Shown: positions 78 to 20,823 of the stretch, in pieces
How positions within the stretch are numbered: position 1 is the stretch's first letter
Layout of the letters: each line of letters opens with the position of its first letter
NCBI GenBank assembly: GCA_002269645.1
Contig: NIVC01003026.1
Coordinates: forward strand, 1 to 25,462
Reading direction: 5' to 3'
DNA: 25,462 nucleotides
DNA from: Macrostomum lignano
Taxonomy: Eukaryota
The notes under the pieces: generated by a model
What the model was told of the DNA's origin: nothing
Databases searched by the model: none
The model's input: only the letters and a program-made list of their open reading frames with translations
Program-made: the position numbers and the translations under genes

Positions 78-140
78 GTGAGGACCGTGTTTTAATCGAT
101 TAGGAAGTCAGGGGTCTTGGCTATTATAGCGCTCTTGGCC

Positions 141-343
141 TAGGGACCGGGGTCTAGCCACAGGTATACAGCAGCTTCTGGCATAGGACCGGGGTCTAGC
201 CAGAGGTATACAGCAGCTTCTGCATAGGGACGGGGTCTAGCCACAGGTATACAGCAGCTTGTGGCATAGGGACCGGGTCTAGCCACAGGTATACAGCAGC
301 TTCTGGCATAGGGACCGGGGTCTAGCCACAGGATACAGCGGCT
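141..343. repeat. 43-bp tandem repeat (TAGGGACCGGGGTCTAGCCACAGGTATACAGCAGCTTCTGGCA), about 4.7 copies, within intron 78-425
   Basis: Directly visible. Copies differ mostly by single-base deletions. Confidence 0.95.
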
Positions 344-425
344 TTTGATTTGCGGCAGTTCCCGAAGCCCCTGCAAATTAACTAACCAGCCTTCCTCTCA
401 TTGTCCGGTTATTGATCTCTTCCAG

Positions 426-2677: not shown

Positions 2678-3104
2678 TGGTAGATTGTGTGGTAGTTAAG
2701 TGATTAATAGATTGTGTGGTAGTTGAGTGATTGGTAGATTGTGTGGTAGTTGAGTGATTGGTAGATTGCGTGGTAGTTGAGTGATTGGTAGATTGTGTGG
2801 TAGTTGAGTGATTGGTAGATTGTGTGGTAGCAGACTGATTGGTAGATTGTGTGGTAGTTGAGTGATTGGTAGATTTTGTGGTAGTTGAGTGATTGGTAGA
2901 TTGTGTGGTAGTTGAGTGATTGGTAGATTGTGTGGTAGCAGACTGATTGGTAGATTGTGTGGTAGCAGACTGATTGGTAGATTGTGTGGTAGTTGAGTGA
3001 TTGGTAGATTTTGTGGTAGTTGAGTGATTGGTAGATTGTGTGGTAGTTGAGTGATTGGTAGATTGTGTGGTAGCAGACTGATTGGTAGATTGTGTGGTAG
3101 CAGA
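2678..3104. repeat. 27-bp minisatellite (TGATTGGTAGATTGTGTGGTAGTTGAG, variant ...GTAGCAGAC), left arm, about 16 copies
   Basis: Directly visible; interrupted at ...TAGCAGA| by the DNA transposon. Confidence 0.97.
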
Positions 3105-3141: not shown

Positions 3142-3251
3142 CATTCGCTCAAACAAGATAACATGCCCTATTCCGGTTATGCAAAATGTTATCTTGTATG
3201 AATCTTGTTTGCGTGACGAAATCTTACGTTTCCTTGTTTCAAACAAGATTC

Positions 3252-3708
3252 AAACAGGATTCGCTGACCAGGTAACAGTCGGGTAATTCATGCGAATCCT
3301 GCAGGGAAACATCGTGTTATCCTGTTTGTTATCTTGTTTGTTATCCTGTCTGGCAAACAGGATTCGCTGACCAGGTAACAGTCGGGTAATTCGTGCGAAT
3401 CCTGCAGGGAAATATCGTGTTATCCTGTTTGTTATCTTGTTTGTTATCCTGTCTGGCAAACAGGATTCGCTGACCAGGTAACAGTCGGGTAATTCGTGCG
3501 AATCCTGCAGGGAAATATCGTGTTATCCTGTTTGTTATATTGTTTGTTATCCTGTCTGGCAAACAGGATTCGCTGACCAGGTAACAGTCGGGTAATTCAT
3601 GCGAATCCTGCAGGGAAACATCGTGTTATCCTGTTTGTTATCTTGTTTGTTATCCTGTCTGGCAAACAGGATTCGCTGACCAGGTAACAGTCGGTTAATC
3701 CATGCGAA
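3252..3708. repeat. 103-bp subterminal tandem repeat, about 4.4 copies
   Basis: AAACAGGATTCG recurs at 3252, 3355, 3458, 3561, 3664; contains GTTATCCTG/GTTATCTTG motifs related to the TIR. Confidence 0.95.
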
Positions 3709-4564
3709 AGAAGCCGGAAGGCATTGACATCAAATTTTGCAGTAAAGATGCATATAAGAAGTTGGTGTTTCAAGATTTTATGAGTAGCATCTCTATATTT
3801 AACAGCGGGTTGTACTTTGTAAGCGCCTTATACAAACTAAACAAGGAACAGGAACAAGCTCAACAGGAACGAAAACTTCTGGAGAACAGCGTGGCATACG
3901 TATGAGTTTCGACAGTCGAGTTATAAGTAGACCTACTTATACTGTGGCTACTAATTGATACTACTGAATTGGTGATCTGCTGCGAGCTGGTGCTGAGTCG
4001 CAGGTCGGACCTGCTGTACTCGGACGCCACTCTGATGGCAGTCGATGCGTGAGCCAGACGTTTGAAAGATCGGGTCGCGCGCGTGGAAGGCGATTAATGA
4101 GACCACTGATGGGGGCTTGCATTATATGCCTGCGCAATGGAACGACTCTGCAATATTAAAGTTAAATTAAATGGCGATGGAAGGCAGTTTCCCCAAAATA
4201 TACACAGTTATAAAGAAACAGCAATGTACATACAGGTGATAGAACATACATCGATAGAATTGTCATTCGTAGCATAGTCGTCGTCCGGAATCAACTGGCT
4301 TTCGTTGATCGGCTGCTCGTAGACCGGAGACAAAGTGAATTGTGTATCATCTGGTGCGCCGGCTCGCTCGGCGCTGGCTTCGTTGCGTCCACGAAATGCC
4401 GACTACGCTGGAAACTCTTACCTGATTGTTTTCGCAATCCCGTGCGCCAACGGTAATATCCAACCGACTTGGCGTTGCAGATGTCGCTAGTGCGATGGAC
4501 GATCGTCCAACGGCGTCATCAACTGCGTCGTTCGAAGCAGTGACACCCTCCGGAAAAAGTGGCT

Positions 4565-4679
4565 GACAAGATTGCCGACACTCATGGTCTGTAACGACTA
4601 CTCCCTTGACTTGTTCGAGGATTTATTAAATCTCGACAAGATTACCGACATGGTCTGTAACGACTACTCTCTTGACTTG
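4565..4679. repeat. Two about 45-49-bp direct repeats (4565-4613, 4635-4679) separated by a hairpin-forming spacer
   Basis: GACAAGATT(G/A)CCGACA..ATGGTCTGTAACGACTACTC(C/T)CTTGACTTG occurs twice; spacer TCGAGGATTTATTAAATCTCGA is self-complementary. Confidence 0.85.
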
Positions 4680-4915
4680 ATCTGCTCTCGGCTGGTGCAA
4701 CTGCAAACGCCTTAGACAAACCAATGGAGCATGCACCGACAAAAATCGGATTAGCGTCTATCTTAATAGGAAAGCTGCTTTGCATACTGGGCCAGTTAGA
4801 GCTATTTGGAACCATGCCACAGTCTCCGTCTAGACACCCAGCTGTGCCAAACAATATGGTTGGCTGACTCATGCTTCTAAGCGTCAAATATGACGATAGA
4901 ATCATTCAGCCCGTT

Positions 4916-4927
4916 GACACACTAAGC
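4916..4927 (+). repeat. Target-site duplication of the retrotransposon (GACACACTAAGC; second copy 9042-9053)
   Basis: Identical 12-mer on both flanks. The first GA of the right copy is ambiguous with the (GAA)n tail. Confidence 0.93.
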
Positions 4928-4934
4928 TGTAAGC

Positions 4935-5012
4935 GCTGGCCGATTGTTCCCCCACCTTCACGAGGTGGCCAGTGGACAAGACCCGAAAAAGTCTTGGCAA
5001 AGAAGGGAGCAA
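4935..5012 (+). ncRNA. HDV-like (CPEB3-type) self-cleaving ribozyme
   Basis: P1 GCUGGCC 4935-41 / GGCCAGU 4967-73 with G1.U wobble; P3 ACC/GGU; L3 UUCACGA; P1.1 GG 4974-75; P4 CAAGAC 4977-82 / GUCUUG 4991-96; J4/2 GCAAA with catalytic C4998; P2 UUGUUCCC 4944-51 / GGGAGCAA 5005-12, with an imperfect proximal part. Confidence 0.85.
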
Positions 5013-8000
5013 ACGGAAGGGACCATGGATCGAAGCCACTGGCGGAAGCCAGTACGACGACACCGGCCCTTTTCACTCGTGGTACCCAGAAGTAGCCGAC
5101 CTGGGTACCGAGATTAACCAGGCAAAAACCAGTGGACAGCACAAAGGTAGAGAGCTAGAGGAACAGCAGAGCCGCACAAGACCAAGCCGGAAACAAAGGT
5201 CGGCGGAAGTGAAAGCACAGCTGACGACAGTAGAGAAGAACCCAGGACCAAACAGGAAGGAAAGACCAAAGAAAGAATCCGAAAACCCAAGAAAAAGCAC
5301 AAAACGACCGAAAACCCAAAAAGAGAAGAAAAGCAGACTAATCAGAAGAACCCGACGCCGTGGAACAAGAAGAACGAAGAAGATTAACAAACGCAGAGAA
5401 ACATTAAACAACGAGCTGAGAATAACAACATGGAATGTCCAGCGGGCAAACGTGTTCGGCACGCGTTTTGGAGAGATCGCAAAAAAGATTATGAGTGAGA
5501 ATTGGGAGGTAGCCCTCATCTCGGAGTTATCGGCACCGTCAGACGGAATAAGAAGTTACCACCAACCGAAACAAAATTCATTCCTGATTCACGGCAAGAA
5601 AACAGGCATCATCCTAAACCAGGAATTGTACCAGACGTGGAAGGACAGCGGATCAAAAAAGAAGATTACGAACAGAGCGATCATGATAGAAATATACGAC
5701 GCGACATTGATCAGCGTGTACTGCCCAGTTAGAGGCACTCCGGACTACGAAACGGAACTAGCAGAGCTCAGAAACACCCTGGAACGTTACATTCATAATG
5801 AAAGAAAGAACAAACCAATCATCATTGGCGGTGACATGAACGCACAGATTGGCAAATTTGAAAGCACAGACGCGCAACATCGAGGAAAGTTTGGCTTAGC
5901 ACTGACCAACCAGCAGGGCGAAGACCTCGCAAACTGGTTAGTGACAAATGATCTAGCCTGGATCAACTCGTTCCACAAGTCAAAAAACCGGGGAACCTGG
6001 AGAAATCCAAGCACCGGCACGTGGTATGAGATAGACGGCTTCATAACTCGCGCGCAGGACAGACACCGCCTGGTCAAAACGATAAAGAACCACAACAAGT
6101 GCAACTTGTCGGACCACCTGCCCAAAACCGTCATAATTCGGGGCTGGACACGGAACAAGTACGTCAAGGACCAGACGAGACGCAGGCGGAAGAACATCGA
6201 CTGGAGGAAACTCCACGACGAGAACAAGGCATCTGAGTTAAAAAAAGAAATACTAACAAGATTCGAAGAACTAAGAGAGAAGCAGGACAGGAACCTCACA
6301 GACATGAAATGGACAGACGTTCAAAACTCAATCATCGACAGTGCAAGGCACGTATGCGGCACGGTGACACGAGTAACGAACCCGTGGATGGCCCCCACAC
6401 TGGACGAACACGAGGCACAACAAAGAGAGCTGGCAGAAACGCTGGCCCATCGCAACGCATGCGTCAGAGAAGACCCCACCTCGGCGGCGACGACCCTAGC
6501 CCGCCTAGCGACTACAACTATCCGAAAAAAGATAAAAAAGAAGCTCGCGGAATGGGAGGAAAACTGGTGGGACGCAATCGCTGAGGAATGCAGAAATGCC
6601 GCGGATAGAGGCCAGATCGCAGTGGTCTATGAGAAATTAAGGATGTTGGACAAGCGAGGAAAGTGGAACAACAGCGGAACAGACACCAACTTTGACGAAG
6701 ATGACTTCAAGAACCATTTGGAAAGAATCCAAGGGACTAGATTGGAAAACCCGGAAACCGAAACAGCCGAACTGATCAGATCAATCAAAACCATGAAGGA
6801 ACAGGAAGATACGGAAAAGACAAGAACACAACTGACGACAGTCCCAACGGACCTTGAAATAGAAGCAGCCATTAAAGAAATGAAAGACCGAAGTCCCGGG
6901 GAGGACGAACTTCGTATCAGATACATTAGAATCGCCCCAGACGCAGTACGTAAAGAACTGTATGCAAGGATCCGCTTTCTGTTTGAAGAGCGAGCGCACA
7001 AATGGAATGACAACGAGAAAATTGGACTCATTATTCCATTATTCAAGAAGGGAGACCGAGCAGACATGAATAACTACAGAGGAATCTGCCTATTACCTAT
7101 GCTCAGCAGAATACTAGCCCGCATTCTGGCTACCAGAATCCGGAATTGGGCAGAAGTGATAGGAGCGCTAGATGACAACCAGAACGGCTTCCGAAGTGGA
7201 AGATCGACGGCGGACAACGCACAGATATTCACCAGGATGCACGAGGACATTGCCGAGTACCTGGAAACAAAAAGAGCATCAGGAGACTGCAACATCGAAG
7301 ACACAGAAACGGCAATCCTCCTAGACCTCCGTAAGGCATATCCGAGAGTGTGCAAGCCGATCCTGTGGGGAATCCTCCAAGCGTACAAGATGCCGCAAGA
7401 GACGATCGAAAAACTGAAAGACCTGCATGAACATACCGCGTATAAAGTGCAAGGCAAGGAGAAATCAAGCGAAACATGGCTACCCGAGCGAGGCTTACGC
7501 GAGGGATGCCCAACTTCCCCGATATTATTTAACATCTACCACCAGGCGAGCATCAGGAAAGCGGAAGAAACTCGGGAGACAGAAGCGGCCAGCAGAGGAT
7601 TAAGCTGCGGGGTGGAATGGACGTACTTACCTGGACACTCCTTGCCACCTCAGAGAACCAACCAGTACAACTCGGAGATGCGAACGGTCAAGTGGACCTC
7701 ATCGCTCTTTGCAGACGACACCACCATCCTAGGCAATGGCAGAGAACTGACGAGAAGCCTAACAACGACCAAAGAGAATATGAAGAAGTTCGAAGAACTG
7801 ACAAATGACGAGAAACAGGAGGAGATGGCCCTAGGAACATCCGCCGGAGGTAAAACTCGCATCCTAGGGTCGTGGATGGATAGGAGATACGACACACAGC
7901 AAAGAATCCAGAGAGCCGCCAAAGCGTGGAATGCGATCAGGAAAAGGTTCCATCGATGCCGCCTGAAAAAGACCACACAAGCTAAAGTGGTCGAGGCGTG

Positions 8001-8988
8001 CGTGGAAAGTGTACTCCTGTTCCATGCGAACACCCGCCCGTTCCTGCTCGGCGAAATCAAGAAAATGCAACAGTTCATCGACAAAACATACCGCAACATT
8101 TGGTCCAACAAGAGAATGGAACCGCTGCGCGAAATGGAAAGCCTAGGAGTAAATATGCAAGATATCCGCAACGAACTAGGTGTTGTGTCATTAAGAACAA
8201 AGATTGAGAAAAGTCACCTAAAAAGGATTGGCCACGTCCTACGGATGGAAGACGACAGACAAATAAAGCAAGCCGTATTAGGGTGGTACAGAGGCCTGGA
8301 AAGGATCCCTAAGCGCAAAAAACGGAAAAACAACACCATATCCTACTGGAAGCGCCTCATCCGGGAAGCCGGTATGGAACCGCAAGACATCGAACGCCAC
8401 GTTCTAGACAGGAAACACTGGCGGAACGTAGTACACCAGCGGACTGTACACCTACAAGAGTGGGAGAGAGTGCAAGGAAAAAAGGCCAAGACGGACAGTA
8501 ACAACAGCCTGATCGAACGAAGTCAAGAACGGTACCACGTAAAAACGAACCCGAGAGAGGTTGGAGATGGCTTCAAATGCGAATACGAACTCTGCGGCAA
8601 AGTGTGTAAAAGCAAGGGCGGACTAACCATCCACCAAAAGAGGATGCATCGCGTGTTTAAAGAGCCGGTGAAATTCAGATGCCACAAATGCGACAAGGAG
8701 TTCCGACAGGAAGCGACCCTGGCAAACCATGAGAAGGTGTGCCAAGGCGAGACGGAAATAGATGCGTCAAGAGTAAAATGTCAGCAATGTGGAAGCACAA
8801 TCGTAAAATCGAACCTAGCGAGGCACAGAAAGACATGTAAAGAACAACACCACAATCCACCGGAGATGGAGGAGAACAAGAGAAGAGCAAGAAAATACCG
8901 AAGGAAGACAGCAGAATGCGACAAGTGCGGAAGAACGTTATCGGCGACAAACATGGCGCGACACAAACGCACTTGCGGTGAAGCCTGA
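4972..8988 (+). CDS. Retrotransposon ORF: basic N-terminus, APE endonuclease (about 5416-6140), reverse transcriptase (FADD at 7708-7719), four C-terminal zinc fingers (8578-8976). True start unknown.
   Basis: APE motifs TWNV, ISE, GGDMNAQIG, EIDGF, SDHLP; RT motifs PLFKKGDRADMNNYRGICLL, QNGFRSGRST, LLDLRKAY, GLREGCPTSPILFN, LFADD. No stops. Frame is open from 4933 but the first ATG is at 5491. Confidence 0.97.
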   Translation: MDKTRKSLGKEGSKRKGPWIEATGGSQYDDTGPFHSWYPEVADLGTEINQAKTSGQHKGRELEEQQSRTRPSRKQRSAEVKAQLTTVEKNPGPNRKERPKKESENPRKSTKRPKTQKEKKSRLIRRTRRRGTRRTKKINKRRETLNNELRITTWNVQRANVFGTRFGEIAKKIMSENWEVALISELSAPSDGIRSYHQPKQNSFLIHGKKTGIILNQELYQTWKDSGSKKKITNRAIMIEIYDATLISVYCPVRGTPDYETELAELRNTLERYIHNERKNKPIIIGGDMNAQIGKFESTDAQHRGKFGLALTNQQGEDLANWLVTNDLAWINSFHKSKNRGTWRNPSTGTWYEIDGFITRAQDRHRLVKTIKNHNKCNLSDHLPKTVIIRGWTRNKYVKDQTRRRRKNIDWRKLHDENKASELKKEILTRFEELREKQDRNLTDMKWTDVQNSIIDSARHVCGTVTRVTNPWMAPTLDEHEAQQRELAETLAHRNACVREDPTSAATTLARLATTTIRKKIKKKLAEWEENWWDAIAEECRNAADRGQIAVVYEKLRMLDKRGKWNNSGTDTNFDEDDFKNHLERIQGTRLENPETETAELIRSIKTMKEQEDTEKTRTQLTTVPTDLEIEAAIKEMKDRSPGEDELRIRYIRIAPDAVRKELYARIRFLFEERAHKWNDNEKIGLIIPLFKKGDRADMNNYRGICLLPMLSRILARILATRIRNWAEVIGALDDNQNGFRSGRSTADNAQIFTRMHEDIAEYLETKRASGDCNIEDTETAILLDLRKAYPRVCKPILWGILQAYKMPQETIEKLKDLHEHTAYKVQGKEKSSETWLPERGLREGCPTSPILFNIYHQASIRKAEETRETEAASRGLSCGVEWTYLPGHSLPPQRTNQYNSEMRTVKWTSSLFADDTTILGNGRELTRSLTTTKENMKKFEELTNDEKQEEMALGTSAGGKTRILGSWMDRRYDTQQRIQRAAKAWNAIRKRFHRCRLKKTTQAKVVEACVESVLLFHANTRPFLLGEIKKMQQFIDKTYRNIWSNKRMEPLREMESLGVNMQDIRNELGVVSLRTKIEKSHLKRIGHVLRMEDDRQIKQAVLGWYRGLERIPKRKKRKNNTISYWKRLIREAGMEPQDIERHVLDRKHWRNVVHQRTVHLQEWERVQGKKAKTDSNNSLIERSQERYHVKTNPREVGDGFKCEYELCGKVCKSKGGLTIHQKRMHRVFKEPVKFRCHKCDKEFRQEATLANHEKVCQGETEIDASRVKCQQCGSTIVKSNLARHRKTCKEQHHNPPEMEENKRRARKYRRKTAECDKCGRTLSATNMARHKRTCGEA
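5025..5117 (+). CDS. Short upstream ORF (30 aa, MDRSHWRKPVRRHRPFSLVVPRSSRPGYRD) overlapping the main ORF in another frame
   Basis: First ATG after the ribozyme, in strong context (ACCATGG), 12 nt after P2; TAA at 5115-5117. Confidence 0.5.
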   Translation: MDRSHWRKPVRRHRPFSLVVPRSSRPGYRD

Positions 8989-8997: not shown

Positions 8998-9041
8998 CTC
9001 CACGCCGCAAGGCGATAAACGGAGAAGAAGAAGAAGAAGAA
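8998..9041 (+). other. 3'UTR stem-loop with GNRA tetraloop followed by (GAA)6 tail
   Basis: CUCC 8998-9001 / GGAG 9021-24 outer stem; CGCC-GCAA-GGCG 9003-9014; (GAA)6 at 9024-9041. Confidence 0.7.
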
Positions 9042-9408
9042 GACACACTAAGCAGCTGTGATAGACTACATGCCAGTGGTAGTCAAACCTCTCGCACACA
9101 ATCAGGGCGCAACAATTTTTCAATTGTCACCTGTACGGAGGATGGGCACAGCCTCACATTACGGACGCTACAGTGCCTCCGAAAAGCAGATCAATCCACC
9201 TTGCAATTTCGAGACTTTATTACCCCTCGGATTAAAGATTGACCCGCGTAGTCAAATAAAAGTGACTACTCTTAGCAGCTGCCTTGAGCCACAACAGACG
9301 CGAGGTTTGATTACCCCTCGTAGGTCAGCATTTTCAGTCAACTGCTCAACTTTGATTCATCGGTTGAAGCGGGGTTCAATTATCCCTCACTGGTGGCCAT
9401 ACACCAAC

Positions 9409-9712
9409 ACTGCAGACGCTTTAGACAACCCAATGGAGCATGCTCTAGCAAGAGCTAGAATAACGTCTGTCTTAAAAAAAGGCTACCTTAGAACTGGGCC
9501 AGTAGGAGCTTTTGGAACCATGCCACAGCTCCATCTAGACACCCAGCTGCACCAGATAATAGGGTAATCTGATACACTAAGTAACCACGACAGACTACAT
9601 GCCATTGGGAGTCAAACCTCTCCAGCACAATAAGAATGCAATAGTTTGTCGAAGAGCCAACAAAGCTATCACCTGCAGGGAGGGTGGGCACGGCCTCACA
9701 TTACGAGCGCTA
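9409..9712 (+). repeat. Copy 2 of the diverged 0.3-kb direct repeat
   Basis: See copy 1. It lacks about 50 bp that copy 1 has just before the RTE target site. Confidence 0.85.
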
Positions 9713-9734: not shown

Positions 9735-9900
9735 TTACCCCTCGCAGGTCAGCTTAGCAGCTGCCTTGAGTCCCAACAGAAGCGAGGATTGATTATCCAT
9801 CGCAGGTCAGCTTATAAGCTGCCTTGAGCCACAACAGAAGCGAGGATTGATTATCCATCGCAGGTCAGCTTATGAGCTGCCTTGAGCCACAACAGACGCG
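9735..9900. repeat. 58-bp tandem repeat (about 2.8 copies); a further dispersed copy at 9271-9329
   Basis: GCAGGTCAGC recurs at 9744, 9802, 9860. Confidence 0.9.
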
Positions 9901-10612
9901 AAGTCCAGTCTTATCCATAACTTCATCGAGATTCGAGTCAATGGGAGCTGATCCCTGTGGATTTGCCGAATCACTTGATCTAGATCTCTGATGAATTCCG
10001 ACTGAACTCCTGAAATCTCATCCAGAACATTTTCATTTGGAAAACCTGAAATTTGGGTCTACAATTAGAATTTAGCAGTGTTCAAGGTGAAAAATTTCGG
10101 AAAATGCAGCCGGAACAGCTTTCCTTTTTCCCGAACTTTTGCAGGATCACATTTCCGGAAAAAGGGGCTATTCCGGGCTAAAAATGCTGATCCGGGCCTT
10201 CACTTGGAAATCAATTAAATTAGGCCTGGATCACGAAATTCTGAAAAAAATTATGGGTGAAAAGTACAACGGGTTCTTACAGACCGGATAACACAAAGGC
10301 ATCTTTGAGGCATTTTCCATTATCTGGTTTGCAAACCAGATTCGCATCCTGTTATCCGGTAAATTTCAGATTCACACAGGTTTCTTACAGACTAGATAAC
10401 GCACAGTTATTCTGATTTAAATCTTGTACTGTTTTCTGTCTTTCAAACAAGCTTCGCACCATGTTATCCTGTGAAATTCCGATTCAAACAAGATTCGATC
10501 AACCAAGATAACAGAGAATTATCTGGTGGCGAATCTTGTACTGTTATCTGATTTTCAAACAAGATTCGCACCATGTTATCCTGTGAAATTCCGATTCAAA
10601 CAAGATTCAATC

Positions 10613-11560
10613 AACCAAGAAAACAAAAAATTATCTGGTGGCAAATCTTGTCATGTAATCTGATTTCTAAGCAAGATTCCGGCCATGTTATCTGGTGAAA
10701 TTCAGATAACTCACCAGATAACAGTCAAACAAGAAAACAAAAAATTATCTGGTGGCAAATCTTGTCATGTAATCTGATTTCTAAGCAAGATTCCGGCCAT
10801 GTTATCTGGTGAAATTCAGATAACTCACCAGATAACAGTCAAACAAGAAAACAAAAAATTATCTGGTGGCAAATCTTGTCATGTAATCTGATTTCTAAGC
10901 AAGATTCCGGCCATGTTATCTGGTGAAATTCAGATAACTCACCAGATAACAGTCAAACAAGAAAACAAAAAATTATCTGGTGGCAAATCTTGTCATGTAA
11001 TCTGATTTCTAAGCAAGATTCCGGCCATGTTATCTGGTGAAATTCAGATAACTCACCAGATAACAGTCAAACAAGAAAACAAAAAATTATCTGGTGGCAA
11101 ATCTTGTCATGTAATCTGATTTCTAAGCAAGATTCCGGCCATGTTATCTGGTGAAATTCAGATAACTCACCAGATAACAGTCAAACAAGAAAACAAAAAA
11201 TTATCTGGTGGCAAATCTTGTCATGTAATCTGATTTCTAAGCAAGATTCCGGCCATGTTATCTGGTGAAATTCAGATAACTCACCAGATAACAGTCAAAC
11301 AAGAAAACAAAAAATTATCTGGTGGCAAATCTTGTCATGTAATCTGATTTCTAAGCAAGATTCGGGCCATGTTATCTGGTGAAATTCAGATAACTCACCA
11401 GATAACAGTCAAACAAGAAAACAAAAAATTATCTGGTGGCAAATCTTGTCATGTAATCTGATTTCTAAGCAAGATTCGGGCCATGTTATCTGGTGAAATT
11501 CAGATAACTCACCAGATAACAGTCAAATAAGAAAACAAAAAATTACCTGGTGACGAATCT
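10613..11560. repeat. 114-bp subterminal tandem repeat, about 8 copies, preceded by degenerate related copies from about 10260
   Basis: AAACAAGAAAAC-type anchor at 10727, 10841, 10955 ... 11525; rich in CAGATAAC/GTTATCTG shared with the TIR. Confidence 0.96.
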
Positions 11561-11662: not shown

Positions 11663-12161
11663 GACTGATTGGTAGATTGTGTGGTAGTTGAGTGATTGGT
11701 AGATTTTGTGGTAGTTGAGTGATTGGTAGATTGTGTGGTAGTTGAGTGATTGGTAGATTGTGTGGTAGCAGACTGATTGGTAGATTGTGTGGTAGCAGAC
11801 TGATTGGTAGATTGTGTGGTAGTTGAGTGATTGGTAGATTTTGTGGTAGTTGAGTGATTAATAGATTGTGTGGTAGTTGAGTGATTGGTAGATTGTGTGG
11901 TAGCAGACTGATTGGTAGATTGTGTGGTAGCAGACTGATTGGTAGATTGTGTGGTAGCAGACTGATTGGTAGATTGTGTGGTAGTTGAGTGATTGGTAGA
12001 TTGTGTGGTAGCAGACTGCTTGGTAGATTGTGTGGTAGTTGAGTGATTGGTAGATTGTGTGGTAGTTGAGTGATTGGTAGATTGTGTGGTAGCAGACTGA
12101 TTAGTAGATTGTGTGGTAGTTGAGTGATTGGTAGATTGTGTGGTAGCAGACTGCTTGGTAG
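11663..12161. repeat. 27-bp minisatellite, right arm, about 18 copies
   Basis: Same unit and register as 2678-3104. Confidence 0.97.
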
Positions 12162-12430: not shown

Positions 12431-13698
12431 CTGACAATCAGCCCAATTCCGCCCGGACAATCAGCCTGAATCCGCCCTGACAATCAGCCTGAATCCGCCC
12501 GGACAATCAGCCTGAATCCGCCCGGACAATCAGCCTGAATCCGCCCGGACAATCAGCCTGAATCCGCCCTGACAATCAGCCTGAATCCGCCCTGACAATC
12601 AGTCTGAATCCGCACTGACAATCAGCCTGAATCCGCCCTGACAATCAACCTGAATCCGCACTGACAATCAGCCTGAATCCGCCCTGACAATCAGTCTGAA
12701 TCCGCACTGACAATCAGCCTGAATCCGCCCTGACAATCAACCTGAATCCGCACTGACAATCAGCCTGAATCCGCCCTGACAATCAGCCTGAATCCGCCCT
12801 GACAATCAACCTGAATCCGCACTGACAATCAGCCTGAATCCGCCCTGACAATCAGTCTGAATCCGCACTGACAATCAGCCTGAATCCGCCCTGACATTCA
12901 GCCTGAATCCGCACTGACAATCAGCCTGAATCCGCCCTGACAATCAACCTGAATCCGCACTGACAATCAGCCTGAATCCGCCCTGACATTCAGCCTGAAT
13001 CCGCACTGACAATCAGCCTGAATCCGCCCTGACATTCAGCCTGAATCCGCACTGACAATCAGCCTGAATCCGCCCTGACATTCAGCCTGAATCCGCCCTG
13101 ACAATCAGTCTGAATCCGCACTGACAATCAGTCTGAATCCGCACTGACAATCATCCTGAGCCTGAATCCGCCCTGACAATCAGCCCAATTCCGCCCTGAC
13201 AATCAGTCTGAATCCGCACTGACATTCAGTCTGAATCCGCACTGACAATCAGTCTGAATCCGCACTGACATTCAGTCTGAATCCGCACTGACAATCAGTC
13301 TGAATCCGCACTGACATTCAGTCTGAATCCGCACTGACATTCAGCCTGAATTCGCCCTGACATTCAGCCTGAATCCGCACTGACATTCAGTCTGAATCCG
13401 CACTGACAATCAGTCTGAATCCGCACTGACATTCAGCCTGAATTCGCCCTGACATTCAGCCTGAATCCGCACTGACATTCAGTCTGAATCCGCACTGACA
13501 ATCAGTCTGAATCCGCACTGACATTCAGCCTGAATCCGCCCTGACATTCAGCCTGAATCCGCACTGACATTCAGCCTGAATTCGCCCTGACATTCAGCCT
13601 GAATCCGCACTGACATTCAGCCTGAATCCGCCCTGACAATCAGCCTAAATCCGCCCTGACAATCAACCTGAATCCGCACTGACAATCAGCCTGAATCA
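12431..13698. repeat. 23-bp minisatellite (GACAATCAGCCTGAATCCGCCCT and variants), about 55 copies, filling intron 2
   Basis: Period 23 (12433, 12456, 12479); one local irregularity near 13150. Confidence 0.97.
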
Positions 13699-13723: not shown

Positions 13724-14204
13724 GCCGATGACCCACCAGTGAGAGGTGAAAACGGCGGCGACCCGGACGCAGTCGATATTGAAGAGTCGGACACGAGGTG
13801 CTCCATTCGGCTTGCCCAGTTGTCATTTTTTATCAACTTAGCATTGGCTATCATCAAAGGCACCGCCATCGCTCTGTCCGGCTCATTATCTGTTGTCTCT
13901 TCGCTAATTGATTCGCTAATTGATCTAGTCAGCGGTATCGTTGTTTGGATCGCTAATCGGCAGGTGAAATCCCGGAATCCTTATTATTATCCGCAGGGCA
14001 AGACTCGCCTGGAACCCATCGCTATTGTCATTCTGGCCGTTATCATGTCCACGTCTACAATTCAGATTATTATTAAAGCTATCGAGTCTATTGTCAATAT
14101 GGCCATGGACACTAAGACTGTAGCCAGCAATGCCAGTTTCTGTTTATGCGACAATGATGCTAATGGTTCCGTGTTCGTCTCCGGACTGGCAGCGGGCCAC
14201 GGTG
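13724..14204 (+). CDS. Mn-CDF exon 3 (TM1-TM3, DSLID motif, YPQGKTRLEP)
   Basis: Acceptor CCTCAAG|GCC, donor GGTG|GTAGGT in phase 1, which gives GAC with exon 4. Motifs SGSLSVVSSLIDSLIDLVSG and YPQGKTRLEPIAI are typical of the CDF/MTP family. Confidence 0.93.
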
Positions 14205-14315
14205 GTAGGTCGCTGACTTGTACGCCTGCATATTTTCTAGAACTGTCTTACGGAAGCGACTAGTGTGTCTCACGTTGTCCAGATGTGTCTTTTCGTGAAT
14301 AGTTCTTGTTTTTGT

Positions 14316-17300
14316 TAGATGGTCCGTGTGTCTCATGGTAGATGGTCCGTGTGTCTCATGGTAGATTATCCGTGTGTCTCATGGTAGATGGTCCGTGTGT
14401 CTCATGGTAGATTATCCGTGTGTCTCACGGTAGATGGTCCGTGTGTCTCATGGTAGATGGTCCGTGTGTCTCATGGTAGATGGTCCGTGTGTCTCATGGT
14501 AGATTATCCGTGTGTCTCATGGTAGATTATCCGTGTGTCTCATGGTAGATTATCCGTGTGTCTCATGGTAGATGGTCCCCGTGTGTCTCATGGTAGATTA
14601 TCCGTGTGTCTCATGGTAGATGGTCCGTGTGTCTCATGGTAGATGGTCCATGTGTCTCATGGTAGATTATCCGTGTGTCTCATGGTAGATTATCCGTGTG
14701 TCTCATGGTAGATTATCCGTGTGTCTCATGGTAGATGGTCCCCGTGTGTCTCATGGTAGATTATCCGTGTGTCTCATGGTAGATTATCCGTGTGTCTCAT
14801 GGTAGATGGTCCGTGTGTCTCATGGTAGATTATCCGTGTGTCTCATGGTAGATGGTCCGTGTGTCTCATGGTAGATTATCCGTGTGTCTCATGGTAGATG
14901 GTCCATGTGTGTCTCATGGTAGATGGTCCATGTGTCTCATGGTAGATGGTCCGTGTGTCTCATGGTAGATTATCCGTGTGTCTCATGGTAGATTATCCGT
15001 GTGTCTCATGGTAGATTATCCGTGTGTCTCATGGTAGATGGTCCCCGTGTGTCTCATGGTAGATGGTCCCCGTGTGTCTCATGGTAGATGGTCCGTGTGT
15101 CTCATGGTAGATTATCCGTGTGTCTCTTGGTAGATTATCCGTGTGTCTCATGGTAGATTATCCGTGTGTCTCATGGTAGATGGTCCCCGTGTGTCTCATG
15201 GTAGATTATCCGTGTGTCTCATGGTAGATTATCCGTGTGTCTCATGGTAGATTATCCGTGTGTCTCATGGTAGATGGTCCGTGTGTCTCATGGTAGATTA
15301 TCCGTGTGTCTCATGGTAGATGGTCCGTGTGTCTCATGGTAGATTATCCGTGTGTCTCATGGTAGATGGTCCATGTGTGTCTCATGGTAGATGGTCCATG
15401 TGTCTCATGGTAGATTATCCGTGTGTCTCATGGTAGATTATCCGTGTGTCTCATGGTAGATGGTCCGTGTGTCTCATGGTAGATGGTCCGTGTGTCTCAT
15501 GGTAGATGGTCCGTGTGTCTCATGGTAGATGGTCCGTGTGTCTCATGGTAGATGGTCCCCGTGTGTCTCATGGTAGATTATCCGTGTGTCTCACGGTAGA
15601 TGGTCCGTGTGTCTCCTGGTAGATTATCCGTGTGTCTCATGATAGATGGTCCCCGTGTGTCTCATGGTAGATGGTCCGTGTGTCTCATGGTAGATTATCC
15701 GTGTGTCTCATGGTAGATGGTCCGTGTGTCTCATGATAGATGGTCCGTGTGTCTCATGGTAGATTATCCGTGTGTCTCATGGTAGATTATCCGTGTGTCT
15801 CATGGTAGATTATCCGTGTGTCTCATGGTAGATTATCCGTGTGTCTCATGGTAGATGGTCCCCGTGTGTCGTATGGTAGATTATCCGTGTGTCTCATGAT
15901 AGATGGTCCCCGTGTGTCTCATGGTAGATGGTCCGTGTGTCTCATGGTAGATTATCCGTGTGTCTCATGGTAGATGGTCCCCGTGTGTCTCATGGTAGAT
16001 TATCCGTGTGTCTCATGGTAGATGGTCCCCGTGTGTCTCATGGTAGATTATCCGTGTGTCTCATGGTAGATGGTCCGTGTGTCTCATGGTAGATTATCCG
16101 TGTGTCTCATGGTAGATTATCCGTGTGTCTCATGGTAGATGGTCCCCGTGTGTCTCATGGTAGATGGTCCGTGTGTCTCATGGTAGATGGTCCGTGTGTC
16201 TCATGGTAGATGGTCCGTGTGTCTCATGATAGATGGTCCGTGTGTCTCCTGGTAGATTATCCGTGTGTCTCATGATAGATGGTCCCCGTGTGTCTCATGG
16301 TAGATGGTCCGTGTGTCTCATGGTAGATGGTCCGTGTGTCTCATGGTAGATGGTCCGTGTGTCTCATGATAGATGGTCCGTGTGTCTCATGGTAGATTAT
16401 CCGTGTGTCTCATGGTAGATTATCCGTGTGTCTCATGGTAGATGGTCCGTGTGTCTCATGGTAGATTATCCGTGTGTCTCATGGTAGATTATCCGTGTGT
16501 CTCATGGTAGATGGTCCCCGTGTGTCTCATGGTAGATGGTCCGTGTGTCTCATGGTAGATTATCCGTGTGTCTCATGGTAGATGGTCCCCGTGTGTCTCA
16601 TGGTAGATTATCCGTGTGTCTCATGGTAGATGGTCCGTGTGTCTCATGGTAGATGGTCCGTGTGTCTCATGGTAGATTATCCGTGTGTCTCATGGTAGAT
16701 GGTCCCCGTGTGTCTCATGGTAGATTATCCGTGTGTCTCATGGTAGATGGTCCGTGTGTCTCATGGTAGATTATCCGTGTGTCTCATGGTAGATTATCCG
16801 TGTGTCTCATGGTAGATGGTCCCCGTGTGTCTCATGGTAGATGGTCCGTGTGTCTCATGGTAGATTATCCGTGTGTCTCATGGTAGATGGTCCGTGTGTC
16901 TCATGGTAGATTATCCGTGTGTCTCATGGTAGATTATCCGTGTGTCTCATGGTAGATGGTCCGTGTGTCTCATGGTAGATGGTCCGTGTGTCTCATGGTA
17001 GATTATCCGTGTGTCTCATGGTAGATTATCCGTGTGTCTCATGGTAGATTATCCGTGTGTCTCATGGTAGATGGTCCGTGTGTCTCATGGTAGATTATCC
17101 GTGTGTCTCATGGTAGATGGTCCGTGTGTCTCATGGTAGATTATCCGTGTGTCTCATGGTAGATGGTCCCCGTGTGTCTCATGGTAGATGGTCCGTGTGT
17201 CTCATGGTAGATTATCCGTGTGTCTCATGGTAGATTATCCGTGTGTCTCTTGGTAGATTATCCGTGTGTCTCATGGTAGATTATCCGTGTGTCTCATGGT

Positions 17301-19914
17301 AGATGGTCCCCGTGTGTCTCATGGTAGATTATCCGTGTGTCTCATGGTAGATGGTCCGTGTGTCTCATGGTAGATTATCCGTGTGTCTCATGGTAGATTA
17401 TCCGTGTGTCTCATGGTAGATGGTCCCCGTGTGTCTCATGGTAGATGGTCCGTGTGTCTCATGGTAGATTATCCGTGTGTCTCATGGTAGATGGTCCCCG
17501 TGTGTCTCATGGTAGATTATCCGTGTGTCTCATGGTAGATGGTCCGTGTGTCTCATGGTAGATTATCCGTGTGTCTCATGGTAGATGGTCCCCGTGTGTC
17601 TCATGGTAGATTATCCGTGTGTCTCACGGTAGATGGTCCGTGTGTCTCCTGGTAGATTATCCGTGTGTCTCATGATAGATGGTCCCCGTGTGTCTCATGG
17701 TAGATGGTCCGTGTGTCTCATGGTAGATTATCCGTGTGTCTCATGGTAGATGGTCCGTGTGTCTCATGATAGATGGTCCGTGTGTCTCATGGTAGATGGT
17801 CCCCGTGTGTCTCATGGTAGATTATCCGTGTGTCTCATGGTAGATTATCCGTGTGTCTCATGGTAGATTATCCGTGTGTCTCATGGTAGATGGTCCCCGT
17901 GTGTCGTATGGTAGATTATCCGTGTGTCTCATGATAGATGGTCCCCGTGTGTCTCATGGTAGATGGTCCGTGTGTCTCATGGTAGATTATCCGTGTGTCT
18001 CATGGTAGATGGTCCCCGTGTGTCTCATGGTAGATTATCCGTGTGTCTCATGGTAGATGGTCCCCGTGTGTCTCATGGTAGATTATCCGTGTGTCTCATG
18101 GTAGATGGTCCGTGTGTCTCATGGTAGATTATCCGTGTGTCTCATGGTAGATTATCCGTGTGTCTCATGGTAGATGGTCCCCGTGTGTCTCATGGTAGAT
18201 GGTCCGTGTGTCTCATGGTAGATTATCCGTGTGTCTCATGATAGATGGTCCCCGTGTGTCTCATGGTAGATGGTCCGTGTGTCTCATGGTAGATTATCCG
18301 TGTGTCTCATGGTAGATGGTCCGTGTGTCTCATGATAGATGGTCCGTGTGTCTCATGGTAGATTATCCGTGTGTCTCATGGTAGATTATCCGTGTGTCTC
18401 ATGGTAGATTATCCGTGTGTCTCATGGTAGATTATCCGTGTGTCTCATGGTAGATGGTCCCCGTGTGTCGTATGGTAGATTATCCGTGTGTCTCATGATA
18501 GATGGTCCCCGTGTGTCTCATGGTAGATGGTCCGTGTGTCTCATGGTAGATTATCCGTGTGTCTCATGGTAGATGGTCCCCGTGTGTCTCATGGTAGATT
18601 ATCCGTGTGTCTCATGGTAGATGGTCCGTGTGTCTCATGGTAGATGGTCCGTGTGTCTCATGGTAGATTATCCGTGTGTCTCATGGTAGATGGTCCCCGT
18701 GTGTCTCATGGTAGATTATCCGTGTGTCTCATGGTAGATGGTCCGTGTGTCTCATGATAGATGGTCCGTGTGTCTCATGGTAGATTATCCGTGTGTCTCA
18801 TGGTAGATTATCCGTGTGTCTCATGGTAGATGGTCCGTGTGTCTCATGGTAGATTATCCGTGTGTCTCATGGTAGATGGTCCGTGTGTCTCATGGTAGAT
18901 TATCCGTGTGTCTCATGGTAGATTATCCGTGTGTCTCATGGTAGATGGTCCCCGTGTGTCTCATGGTAGATGGTCCGTGTGTCTCATGGTAGATGGTCCG
19001 TGTGTCTCATGGTAGATGGTCCCCGTGTGTCTCATGGTAGATTATTCGTGTGTCTCATGGTAGATGGTCCCGTGTGTCTTATGGTAGATTATCCGTGTGT
19101 CTCATGGTAGATGGTCCGTGTGTCTCATGGTAGATTATCCGTGTGTCTCATGGTAGATTATCCGTGTGTCTCATGGTAGATTATCCGTGTGTCTCATGGT
19201 AGATGGTCCGTGTGTCTCATGGTAGATTATCCGTGTGTCTCATGGTAGATTGTCCGTGTGTCTAATGGTAGATTATCCGTGTGTCTCATGGTAGATTATC
19301 CGTGTGTCTCATGGTAGATGGTCCCCGTGTGTCTCATGGTAGATGGTCCGTGTGTCTCATGGTAGATGGTCCGTGTGTCTCATGGTAGATGGTCCCCGTG
19401 TGTCTCATGGTAGATTATCCGTGTGTCTCATGGTAGATGGTCCGTGTGTCTCATGGTAGATTATCCGTGTGTCTCATGGTAGATGGTCCCCGTGTGTCTC
19501 ATGGTAGATTATCCGTGTGTCTCACGGTAGATGGTCCGTGTGTCTCCTGGTAGATTATCCGTGTGTCTCATGGTAGATGGTCCCCGTGTGTCTCATGGTA
19601 GATGGTCCGTGTGTCTCATGGTAGATGGTCCGTGTGTCTCATGGTAGATTATCCGTGTGTCTCATGATAGATGGTCCGTGTGTCGTATGGTAGATTATCC
19701 GTGTGTCTCATGATAGATGGTCCCCGTGTGTCTCATGGTAGATTATCCGTGTGTCTCATGGTAGATTATCCGTGTGTCTCATGGTAGATTATCCGTGTGT
19801 CTCATGGTAGATTATCCGTGTGTCTCATGGTAGATTATTCGTGTGTCTCATGGTAGATGGTCCGTGTGTCTTATGGTAGATGGTCCGTGTGTCTCACGGT
19901 AGATGGTCTGTGTC
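14316..19914. repeat. 23-bp minisatellite (CCGTGTGTCTCATGGTAGAT[TA/GG]T, plus a 25-bp CCCC variant), about 5.6 kb and roughly 240 copies, filling intron 3
   Basis: Period 23 (14349, 14372, 14395); three main unit types plus rare marker variants. Confidence 0.98.
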
Positions 19915-19957
19915 CCATCGACCCGTTTCTAAGCGAATGGTCCTTTGCATTTTGCAG

Positions 19958-20621: not shown

Positions 20622-20706
<85 letters not shown>

Positions 20707-20707
20707 G

Positions 20708-20776
<69 letters not shown>

Positions 20777-20779
20777 TAG

Positions 20780-20820
<41 letters not shown>

Positions 20821-20823
20821 TAG

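What the first reader, a model, noticed from the sequence alone, without database searches (positions are those of the whole stretch)
4935..5012. HDV-like self-cleaving ribozyme at the 5' end of the RTE element
All elements of the nested double pseudoknot appear in the right order (see feature), and L3 UUCACGA differs from the CPEB3 ribozyme loop UUCACGU by one base. The predicted cut (4934/4935) is 7 nt from the end of the TSD, so the insertion is full length to the ribozyme. HDV-like ribozymes are known at the 5' ends of RTE and R2 elements. P2 here has a C x AA internal loop next to J4/2, which could slow cleavage.
Basis: partly seen in the sequence, partly recalled or inferred. Interest (0 to 1): 0.8.

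Follow-up and report, generated by a model that had tools for sequence, protein, structure and literature searches.

The report
HDV-like ribozyme heading a flatworm retrotransposon
The first 76 bases of a full-length, recently active non-LTR retrotransposon in this Macrostomum lignano window fold into a hepatitis-delta-type self-cleaving RNA, a known way for such elements to cut themselves out of longer transcripts, so this is a real but fairly ordinary new example.

Summary
Window 4935-5010 (+) has P1, P2, P3, L3, P1.1, P4 and a J4/2 cytosine (C4998) in the order of an HDV-like nested double pseudoknot. It starts 7 nt after a 12-bp target-site duplication of a 4.1-kb retrotransposon.

No Rfam family reaches its gathering score (best 31.6 bits against 44). 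Related elements settle the matter. Six other autonomous families and one short non-autonomous family, from other assemblies and metagenomes, carry the same fold at the same place. Their P1, P2 and P4 sequences differ but still pair, and the core is conserved (ACC-UUCNCG, GG, R-C-AAA). A model built without the window finds 4935-5013 at 49.4 bits; the next best hit scores 13.5. Copies of one relative diverge upstream exactly at the predicted cut.

The most likely function is self-cleavage of a read-through transcript, which defines the element's 5' end. The retained fold probably also supports cap-independent translation, because the ORF runs through the ribozyme and a 2A-like peptide follows it.

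The "RTE" label is unverified. The layout (ribozyme, 2A, APE, RT, C2H2 fingers, 12-bp TSD) resembles L1Tc/Ingi-type elements.

This is a new member of a known kind. Catalysis is untested.

The parts
4916..4927 (+). Left target-site duplication GACACACTAAGC
   Evidence: Exact 12-bp repeat of 9042-9053.
4928..4934 (+). Seven extra bases TGTAAGC between the TSD and the element. TAAGC repeats the end of the TSD. These bases would lie upstream of the cut.
   Evidence: Relatives show 0, 9 or 15 extra bases at the same junction.
4935..5010 (+). HDV-like ribozyme. P1 4935-4941/4967-4973; P2 4946-4951/5005-5010 with closing pair C4953-G5002; P3 4954-4956/4964-4966; L3 4957-4963; P1.1 4958-4959/4974-4975; P4 4977-4982/4991-4996. 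Predicted cut between C4934 and G4935.
4998..4998 (+). Predicted catalytic cytosine at the start of J4/2 (C-AAA)
   Evidence: The motif purine-C-AAA directly after P4 is present in all 7 autonomous families and in the non-autonomous family G.
4933..8988 (+). Single long open frame that runs through the ribozyme. It is open from the UAA at 4930-4932 to the stop at 8986-8988. The first in-frame ATG (5491) lies inside the endonuclease domain. An in-frame CUG sits at 4936 (+2).
5230..5250 (+). 2A-like ribosome-skipping motif V-E-K-N-P-G-P, about 105 codons into the open frame
   Evidence: The motif is conserved in relatives as DVEKNPGP, DIETNPGP, IERNPGP, IHPNPGP and IEKNPGP. 2A peptides in non-LTR elements: PMC3708506.
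5428..6123 (+). AP-type endonuclease domain
   Evidence: Pfam Exo_endo_phos / Exo_endo_phos_2.
7048..7827 (+). Reverse transcriptase domain
   Evidence: Pfam RVT_1, E = 2.8e-18.
8572..8976 (+). C-terminal cluster of C2H2/C2HC-type zinc fingers. No RNase H domain was detected between the RT and the fingers.
   Evidence: Pfam zf-C2H2.
8998..9024 (+). 3' stem-loop just before the tail: outer CUCC/GGAG, inner CGCC-GCAA-GGCG. Probably the recognition site for the reverse transcriptase.
   Evidence: It covaries with family A (CCUC/GAGG, UGCC-UAAC-GGCG), and the non-autonomous family G has a similar hairpin.
9023..9041 (+). (GAA)n 3' tail
9042..9053 (+). Right target-site duplication GACACACTAAGC

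Best explanation
Window 4935-5010 encodes an HDV-like (nested double-pseudoknot) self-cleaving ribozyme. It is the first module of a 4.1-kb APE-type non-LTR retrotransposon of Macrostomum lignano.

Proposed mechanism:
1. Inferred: the element has no evident promoter of its own, so it is transcribed as part of a longer host or read-through RNA.
2. The fold is shown; catalysis is inferred. The ribozyme folds co-transcriptionally. C4998 in J4/2, with a bound Mg2+, cuts the bond between C4934 and G4935. This leaves a 5'-OH on G4935, so the retrotransposition template starts exactly at the element's first base.
3. The open frame through the ribozyme is shown; the mode of initiation is inferred. The cleaved, uncapped RNA keeps the folded ribozyme at its 5' end. 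Translation of the single ORF starts within or just after it, from an in-frame AUG at +9 to +11 in relatives A, B and E. This copy has no AUG; a CUG lies in frame at +2.
4. The motif is shown; its activity is inferred. A 2A-like NPGP motif releases the ribozyme-encoded leader peptide from the APE-RT-zinc-finger protein.
5. The TSD, tail and a truncated copy are shown. The protein binds the 3' stem-loop and (GAA)n tail and inserts a copy by target-primed reverse transcription. This makes the 12-bp TSD and, in full-length copies, a 5' junction at +1, with or without a few extra bases.
For: **The fold is present**
- All helices are present and script-checked.
- A strict descriptor is unique in the window, with 0 hits in 120 shuffles.
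- The Rfam HDV-F-prausnitzii model matches 4935-5010 over its whole length, E = 2e-4.

**The fold is conserved in relatives**
- Protein-level relatives with 29-46% identity carry the same fold at the same place. They are A (L001, L003, L004, L013, L016), B (L005), C (L010), D (L008), E (L009) and F (L011), plus the non-autonomous family G (L001:2231-2368).
- P1 examples: GCUGGCC/GGCCAGU, GCUCGGU/ACCGAGC, GCUUGGC/GCCAAGC.
- P2 differs in sequence in every family but still pairs. P4 differs likewise.
- On the model-fitted alignment, 95.6% of cells pair, against 27-43% when partners are slid. Six pairs change on both sides. The covariation score is 0.433 against 0.14 for shuffles (0 of 500 shuffles as high).
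- The leave-window-out model R2 scores 49.4 bits (E about 3e-13) at 4935-5013. The next best hit in the window scores 13.5 bits.

**The RNA, not the peptide, is conserved**
- The peptide encoded across the ribozyme is not conserved between families, while the pairings are. Selection therefore acts on the RNA.

**The 5' boundary falls at +1**
- Five family-A copies in different contexts share sequence only from +1 onward.
- In the window, +1 lies 7 nt from the TSD.

**The family is young**
- The 1338-codon ORF is intact.
- A 5'-truncated copy elsewhere in the same genome differs at 1 of 959 bases.

**Precedent**
- HDV-like ribozymes cleave at +1 of L1Tc, R2, R4, Baggins and RTE elements, and act in an IRES-like way (PMC3185411, PMC6765202, PMC3774820).
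Against: - No cleavage assay and no RNA 5'-end data exist for this element.
- No Rfam family reaches its gathering score.
- The pseudoknot-free MFE fold prefers an alternative 7-bp hairpin (C4952-U4958 with G4962-G4968). It competes with L3 and two P1 pairs. The z-score of the fold is only -1.76.
- Only one full-length copy of the window's own family could be examined.
- This copy has no in-frame AUG ahead of the endonuclease, so it might be translationally impaired.
- A family-A variant with the ribozyme core deleted is present at two loci (L018, L020).
- The base at -1 is G at 7 of 8 junctions in relatives. This is unexplained if the cut is precisely at +1.
- The covariation counts come partly from an alignment fitted to the model.
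Confidence: 0.85

Rival explanations
1. The family carries a genuine ribozyme, but this copy is slow or inactive. The cause would be the competing extended P3 hairpin, the P2 internal loop, or the C at -1. On this view the window holds a structural relic rather than a working ribozyme.
For: - An alternative 7-bp hairpin dominates the nested MFE fold: -25.8 kcal/mol against -18.6 for P1+P3+P4.
- This copy lacks the in-frame AUG seen in relatives A, B and E.
- L1Tc downstream sequence is reported to inhibit its own ribozyme (PMC3185411).
Against: - Every core position is intact: G.U at +1, U4957/G4962 in L3, P1.1, C4998 and A-rich J4/2.
- The CxAA loop with a C-G closing pair is identical in relative D.
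- The ORF is intact, and a near-identical truncated copy shows very recent activity of the family.
- Nested-only energy models cannot score the pseudoknotted fold, so the energy comparison is not fair.
Confidence: 0.1
2. The conserved 5' fold works mainly as something other than a self-cleaver. It could be an internal promoter (as Pr77 of L1Tc also is), an IRES-like platform for ribosomes, or a binding site for the element's protein. On this view the 5' end is set by transcription initiation.
For: - L1Tc's first 77 nt are both a promoter and a ribozyme (PMC3185411).
- The ORF runs through the fold, and relatives place their AUG inside it.
- The review describes IRES-like roles for such ribozymes.
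Against: - The conserved features are those specific to catalysis, not merely a stable fold. They are the J4/2 cytosine followed by AAA, the L3 U...G, the two-pair P1.1, and a G-initiated P1 that starts exactly at the element boundary.
- These other roles are compatible with cleavage rather than alternatives to it.
Confidence: 0.04
3. The match is a chance resemblance to the HDV fold in GC-balanced sequence.
For: - A loose descriptor matches about 7 places in the window.
- The Rfam score is below gathering.
Against: - The strict descriptor gives 0 hits in 120 shuffles.
- The site sits exactly at the element's 5' boundary.
- The fold is conserved with covariation in seven other families.
- The leave-out model gives E about 3e-13.
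Confidence: 0.01

Closest known systems
[quoted passage not shown]
   Same: - An HDV-like ribozyme occupies the first ~77 nt and cuts at +1.
- A short leader peptide and a 2A sequence follow.
- Then come an AP endonuclease, an RT and a C-terminal zinc-finger nucleic-acid-binding region in a single ORF.
- The 3' UTR is very short and the TSD is 12 bp (PMC3185411; PMC6765202; window).
   Different: - No RNase H domain was detected here.
- The tail is (GAA)n, not poly(A).
- The host is a flatworm, not a kinetoplastid.
- The ORF here is open through the ribozyme itself.
- Promoter activity is untested.
- No sequence-level or phylogenetic link to the Ingi clade was tested.
HDV-like ribozymes of RTE, Baggins, R2, R4 and SART elements (Ruminski et al. 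2011; Eickbush & Eickbush 2010, 2013)
   Same: - The ribozyme sits at the 5' terminus of a promoter-less non-LTR element.
- It frees the element from a co-transcript.
- The retained fold promotes translation (PMC6765202, PMC3774820).
   Different: - The Rfam models derived from insect examples barely match: drz-agam-1 scores 16 bits.
- This element adds a 2A peptide and C2H2 fingers.
- Membership of the RTE clade is unverified. The primary paper is not in the held library.
Rfam RF02682, HDV ribozyme from Faecalibacterium prausnitzii (best-scoring Rfam model)
   Same: The match covers the whole model (positions 1-74), with P1, P3, P4 and J4/2 aligned.
   Different: - The score is 31.6 bits, below the gathering score of 44.
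- That family is bacterial and has no retrotransposon context.
- Relatives A to F are not detected by it at all.
CPEB3 ribozyme (mammalian intronic HDV-like ribozyme)
   Same: The UUCNCG core of L3 is conserved across families W, A, B and F here.
   Different: - The Rfam CPEB3 family gave no hit at E <= 10.
- The genomic context differs (an intron of a host gene, not a transposon end).
- The comparison rests on recalled sequence and was not tested.
Twister-variant ribozymes at the 5' end of Perere-3 (RTE clade) in the flatworm Schistosoma mansoni
   Same: - The job is the same in the same phylum. A 5' ribozyme sits next to the TSD and cleaves the co-transcript.
- The residual fold suffices for translation of APE/RT (PMC8501958).
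   Different: The ribozyme class is different: twister there, an HDV-like double pseudoknot here.

Membership tests
HDV-like self-cleaving ribozymes | Nested double pseudoknot: P1, P2, P3, P1.1 and P4 in the order P1a-P2a-P3a-L3-P3b-P1b-P1.1-P4-J4/2-P2b | tested here: met
   All helices pair, and P3b abuts P1b directly.
HDV-like self-cleaving ribozymes | Cut site immediately 5' of the first base of P1, typically a G in a G.U or G-C pair | tested here: met
   G4935.U4973 is present. Relatives have G-C or G.U, and one has A-U. The position of the cut itself is inferred, not measured.
HDV-like self-cleaving ribozymes | Catalytic cytosine at the start of J4/2, directly after P4 | tested here: met
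   C4998 is followed by AAA. The motif purine-C-AAA is conserved in all families examined.
HDV-like self-cleaving ribozymes | L3 of about 7-8 nt whose positions 2-3 pair with the two bases after P1 (P1.1) | tested here: met
   L3 is UUCACGA, with U4958.G4975 and C4959-G4974. The GG is invariant in relatives. L3 is 2 nt longer in A, B and F, and carries a 24-nt insertion in D.
HDV-like self-cleaving ribozymes | Helices supported by compensatory changes among homologues | tested here: met
   One search covers P1 and P4: 6 pairs change on both sides and 95.6% of cells pair. One search covers P2, which differs in all seven families yet still pairs. P3 is nearly invariant, so it is uninformative.
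HDV-like self-cleaving ribozymes | Reaches the curated score of an Rfam HDV-like family | tested here: not met
   There are no gathering-level hits. The best is RF02682 at 31.6 bits against 44. Rfam's HDV-like families are narrow, lineage-specific models.
HDV-like self-cleaving ribozymes | [quoted passage not shown] | not testable with these tools
   This needs an in vitro transcription and cleavage assay.
RTE clade of non-LTR retrotransposons | Single ORF with an N-terminal AP endonuclease and an RT | tested here: met
   The ORF also has a 2A-like leader and C2H2 fingers, which are not part of the RTE description in PMC8501958.
RTE clade of non-LTR retrotransposons | Very short 3' UTR ending in short tandem repeats (feature recalled from Malik & Eickbush 1998, not checked in a held paper) | tested here: met
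   A 34-nt 3' UTR is followed by (GAA)6.
RTE clade of non-LTR retrotransposons | RT domain groups with RTE reference elements in a phylogeny | not tested
   No named reference sequences were available. The protein hits carry no clade names.
Ingi/L1Tc-type (or Vingi-type) non-LTR retrotransposons | HDV-like ribozyme, then N-terminal 2A, APE, RT and a C-terminal C2H2 region in one ORF, with a 12-bp TSD | tested here: met
   compared with PMC3185411 and PMC6765202. This is a match of layout only.
Ingi/L1Tc-type (or Vingi-type) non-LTR retrotransposons | RNase H domain after the RT, and a poly(A) tail (L1Tc/Ingi proper) | tested here: not met
   No RNase H hit even at E <= 1. The tail is (GAA)n. 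From memory, Vingi lacks RNase H; that paper is not held.
Ingi/L1Tc-type (or Vingi-type) non-LTR retrotransposons | RT phylogeny with Ingi/Vingi references | not tested
   No reference sequences were available.

The most novel reading that the evidence does not exclude
The ribozyme is also the translation start site. After self-cleavage the RNA is uncapped, and its ORF begins inside the folded double pseudoknot. In relatives A, B and E an in-frame AUG lies only 8-10 nt from the new 5'-OH end. In the window and in relatives C and D there is no AUG at all, and the window and D have an in-frame CUG at +2. A 2A peptide then discards the ribozyme-encoded leader.

If true, this would be a compact cleave, initiate and skip expression cassette, shared by a widespread marine group of non-LTR elements and copied by a non-autonomous partner element.
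Probability: 0.3. Interest if true: 0.6.

Novelty: new member of a known kind. Interest (0 to 1): 0.35.

Why it matters
- **Annotation gap.** This element group occurs in Macrostomum lignano, in several unidentified eukaryotic assemblies and in marine metagenomes. Standard Rfam annotation misses its ribozymes. A family-specific covariance model would annotate them and would mark true full-length 5' ends.
- **A tractable system.** M. lignano is a laboratory flatworm with transgenesis. The family looks recently active, so 5'-end processing, cap-independent and possibly non-AUG initiation inside a ribozyme, and 2A skipping could all be tested in vivo.
- **Wider distribution of a known layout.** The ribozyme-2A-APE-RT-zinc-finger layout first described for trypanosome L1Tc also turns up here in a flatworm.
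- **Limits.** The principle is well established, so this does not change the current understanding.

Tried and rejected
**Ribozyme detection**
- Rfam at gathering scores found nothing.
- Rfam in E-value mode found no HDV-like hit in any relative.
- A loose structural descriptor hit about 7 sites in the window and was dropped as uninformative.
- A MAFFT alignment of six families misaligned the 3' halves. I used model-based alignments and a script-checked manual parse instead.
- A pseudoknot-free MFE fold cannot represent the structure and gave only z = -1.76.

**Other copies and relatives**
- No second copy of the element lies in the window.
- The strongly AT-skewed region 14-21 kb looked like another retroelement. 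It is a 23-bp minisatellite.
- The distant relatives L006 and L007 (22-23% identity) and L002 show no ribozyme.
- L012, L014, L015, L017, L019 and L021 are 5'-truncated, cut by the contig end, or too divergent.

**Clade assignment**
- No named reference sequences were available, and the protein hits carry no clade names.
- The supplement of Odon et al. and that of the 2025 2A survey are not held.
- Ruminski 2011, Webb 2009 and Kojima 2011 are not held.

**Literature checks**
- The CPEB3 L3 comparison could not be verified.
- No paper in the held library links M. lignano to ribozymes of this kind.

Full report
**1. The observation**

- P1 is G4935-C4941 with G4967-U4973, 7 bp, with a G.U wobble at the first pair.
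- Twelve bases follow that contain the 5' strand of P2.
- P3 is A4954-C4956 with G4964-U4966. It closes the 7-nt loop L3, UUCACGA, and abuts the 3' strand of P1 directly.
- G4974-G4975 can pair with C4959 and U4958 of L3, forming P1.1.
- P4 is C4977-C4982 with G4991-G4996.
- Then come G4997, C4998 and AAA.
- The 3' strand of P2 is G5005-C5010, pairing with G4946-C4951. C4953-G5002 is a closing pair, and C4952 faces A5003-A5004.
- All pairs were checked by script.
- The 12-bp target-site duplication GACACACTAAGC lies at 4916-4927 and 9042-9053. Seven bases, TGTAAGC, separate it from G4935.

**2. Chance**

- A deliberately loose descriptor matched about seven places on the two strands of the window. 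A loose match therefore means little.
- A strict descriptor was then used. It requires:
  - a G at +1 and a 7-bp P1;
  - a 3-bp P3 abutting P1;
  - an L3 of 7-9 nt with U at position 1 and G at position 6;
  - a two-pair P1.1 and a P4 of at least 5 bp;
  - CAA within 2 nt after P4, and a P2 of at least 6 bp.
- It matched only 4935 in the window and nothing in 120 dinucleotide-preserving shuffles, both strands. It was written after the site had been seen, so it is not an unbiased test.
- Rfam gives nothing at gathering scores.
- In E-value mode on 4850-5100, the HDV-F-prausnitzii family (RF02682) aligns end to end with 4935-5010: 31.6 bits against a gathering score of 44, E = 2e-4. drz-agam-1 aligns weakly at 16 bits.

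**3. The element**

- The ribozyme opens a 4.1-kb insertion. A single frame is open from 4933 to the stop at 8986-8988.
- Domains: AP endonuclease (Pfam Exo_endo_phos_2), RT (RVT_1, E = 2.8e-18) and a C-terminal cluster of C2H2-type fingers. No RNase H was found even at E <= 1.
- About 105 codons into the frame lies V-E-K-N-P-G-P (5230-5250), a 2A-like ribosome-skipping motif.
- After the stop come 34 nt that form a small nested stem-loop (8998-9024). A (GAA)n tail (9023-9041) and the second TSD copy follow.
- An exact look-up of the last 204 residues places the family in Macrostomum lignano (GCA_002269645.1). It also retrieves a 5'-truncated 959-nt copy at another locus that differs at one base. 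The family was therefore active very recently.

**4. Relatives**

Protein searches and contig look-ups gave related elements with 29-46% identity from other assemblies and marine metagenomes.

Each relative with an intact 5' end carries the same fold at the same place:
- family A: L001:2618, L003:1493, L004:536, L013:436, L016:302;
- family B: L005:2493;
- family C: L010:1574;
- family D: L008:536;
- family E: L009:347;
- family F: L011:82.

Conserved across families are ACC-UUCNCG (P3 and L3), the GG of P1.1, and purine-C-AAA after P4.

The helices differ in sequence but still pair:

| Helix | W (window) | A | B | C | D | F |
|---|---|---|---|---|---|---|
| P1 | GCUGGCC/GGCCAGU | GCUCGGU/ACCGAGC | GCUUGGC/GCCAAGC | | | |
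| P2 | GUUCCC/GGGAGC | UGACUUC/GAAGUCA | GGC(G)UCCU/AGGAGCC | GUGUGU/GCACAC | UUGGUC/GACCAA | GGAUUC/GAAUCC |
| P4 | CAAGAC/GUCUUG | CAGGG/CCCUG | CAGGAG/CUCCUG | | | |

Quantitative support:
- On the model-fitted alignment A5, 95.6% of cells pair, against 27-43% when the partners are slid by 1-3 columns.
- Six pairs show changes on both sides.
- The covariation score is 0.433 against 0.14 for shuffles (0 of 500 as high).
- A model built only from A, B and F, so without the window, finds 4935-5013 at 49.4 bits (E about 3e-13; calibration is rough). The next best hit in the window scores 13.5 bits.

The peptide encoded across the ribozyme is not conserved between families. The constraint is therefore on the RNA.

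**5. The 5' boundary**

- Five family-A copies in unrelated contexts share sequence only from the first G of P1 onward. The preceding base is G in four copies and T in L013.
- Between the target and +1 there are 0, 9 or 15 extra bases in A copies and 7 in the window. This is the kind of variable 5' junction described for R2 (PMC3774820).
- This is what a 5' end set by cleavage at +1 predicts.

**6.

- The CxAA internal loop with a C-G closing pair next to J4/2 is identical in family D. In A it is replaced by AxG with a U-A closing pair, and in E by Ax(AG) with a C-G closing pair. It is a family trait rather than damage.
- The nested MFE fold of this copy prefers an extended P3 hairpin (C4952-U4958 with G4962-G4968). 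That hairpin competes with L3 and with two P1 pairs. It is a more concrete candidate for slow folding, but pseudoknot-free energies cannot decide.

**7. Translation**

- In A, B and E an AUG lies inside the ribozyme at +9 to +11, in J1/2 or the 5' strand of P2. It is in frame with the whole ORF. P0009 (1326 aa), P0017 and P0039 start there.
- In the window the equivalent triplet is AUU, and it is out of frame.
- The long frame has no AUG until 5491, which already lies inside the endonuclease domain. It is open back to 4933 and has CUG at +2.
- Family D uses the same frame with the same CUG.
- Either these elements initiate without an AUG on the cleaved, uncapped RNA, or this copy is impaired.
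- Reviews and the L1Tc and Perere-3 papers describe ribozyme-terminated RNAs being translated in an IRES-like way.
- The 2A motif is conserved in all relatives (DVEKNPGP, DIETNPGP, IERNPGP, IHPNPGP, IEKNPGP). It would remove the ribozyme-encoded leader.

**8. Comparison with known systems**

- HDV-like ribozymes at the 5' ends of R2, R4, Dong, Baggins, RTE and L1Tc elements are established (PMC6765202, PMC3774820, PMC3185411).
- The closest layout is L1Tc: a ribozyme in the first 77 nt, a short peptide, 2A, APE, RT, a zinc-finger chaperone, a very short 3' UTR and a 12-bp TSD.
- This element differs from L1Tc in lacking RNase H and in having a (GAA)n tail.
- Odon et al. found 2A in the Rex1, Crack, L2, L2A, CR1 and Ingi clades, and did not list RTE.
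- The short 3' UTR with a trinucleotide tail and the single APE+RT ORF fit RTE.
- In another flatworm, Schistosoma mansoni, the RTE element Perere-3 uses twister variants for the same job.

**9. Verdict**

- This is a real feature, correctly read.
- It is a new member of a known kind: an HDV-like 5' ribozyme of an APE-type non-LTR retrotransposon. Current Rfam models do not detect it at curated thresholds.
- Catalysis, the in vivo 5' end and the mode of translation initiation are inferred, not shown.

Noticed in passing
window 5230-5250; L001:2881-2904; L005:2753-2776; L010:~1865-1888; L009:~610-630; L011:~862-885: A 2A-like ribosome-skipping motif (xExNPGP or IHPNPGP) lies between the ribozyme-encoded leader and the endonuclease in the window and in every relative. 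In P0041 (L010) a PHD-like finger follows it.
   Followed up: partly
window 4933-5491; L003:1501; L005:2501; L009:357: The ORF runs through the ribozyme. Relatives A, B and E have an in-frame AUG at +9 to +11 inside the fold. The window, C and D have none. In the window the first in-frame ATG (5491) is inside the endonuclease, and the window and D have an in-frame CUG at +2.
   Followed up: partly
L001:2231-~2610 (ribozyme 2231-2368); L004:4646-~4980; L005:6568-end; L003:5545- (5'-truncated): A short (~380 nt) non-coding element has its own complete HDV-like ribozyme. P1 is GCUAGCC/GGCUAGC in consensus, L3 is UCCUCGU, P4 is large (CACAG...CUGUG), GGCAAA follows, and P2 is UGGUUGG/CCAACCA. Its 3' hairpin and repeat tail resemble those of the autonomous family. 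It looks like a non-autonomous partner that borrows the LINE machinery.
   Followed up: partly
window 8998-9024; L004:~4540-4566; L001:~2512-2540: A small nested stem-loop sits just before the repeat tail. It covaries between the window (CUCC/GGAG, CGCC-GCAA-GGCG) and family A (CCUC/GAGG, UGCC-UAAC-GGCG). It is probably the 3' recognition element for reverse transcription.
   Followed up: partly
L004:~520-536, L005:2340-2492, L011:~40-81, L001:2190-2230, L004:4585-4645: Families A, B, F and G usually sit directly after long (GAT)n arrays, either tandem to the tail of another element or targeted to the microsatellite. The base before +1 is G at 7 of 8 junctions. It is T in L013 and C in the window. 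The recurrent G is unexplained.
   Followed up: partly
L018:1-60, L020:12-70: A family-A variant has the ribozyme core deleted, from P3 to about 150 nt downstream. It is present at two loci, and both copies carry stop codons.
   Followed up: no
L008:555-585: Family D (Tara Oceans contig) has a 24-nt insertion inside L3, the catalytic loop. All other ribozyme elements, including the CxAA P2 loop, match the window. It may be inactive or may have an extended P3.
   Followed up: no
L022:4712-5670 (M. lignano NIVC01000271.1): A 5'-truncated 959-nt copy of the window's element, with a longer (GAA)n tail, differs at 1 base (window 8350 A, copy T). This indicates very recent retrotransposition. A second annotated fragment is PAA53620.1.
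   Followed up: yes
window 4952-4968: An alternative 7-bp hairpin (CCACCUU/GAGGUGG) competes with L3 and two P1 pairs. It dominates the pseudoknot-free MFE fold. It is not seen in relatives.
   Followed up: partly
window 13739-14263 and 19945-20526 (+); 14316-19913; 20622-21054: Two exons of a Cation_efflux/ZT_dimer (CDF zinc transporter-like) gene are separated by an intron. The intron is filled with about 240 copies of a 23-bp minisatellite, which explains the strong AT and GC skew. A (TCTG)n array of about 109 units follows the second exon.
   Followed up: partly
window 136-344, 1124-1749, 2678-3100, 3251-3708, 9735-9901, 10320-11560, 11666-12161, 12431-13697: The window is packed with minisatellites (periods 23-114). 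The 27-bp array at 2678-3100 recurs at 11666-12161. The element's own flanks are repeated: 4700-4860 resembles 9408-9566.
   Followed up: partly
L002:1-60: A distant relative (P0002; 35% identity to the query over 36% of its length) starts right after (TTTAGGG)n telomere-type repeats. It is possibly a telomere-associated insertion. No ribozyme was recognised.
   Followed up: no
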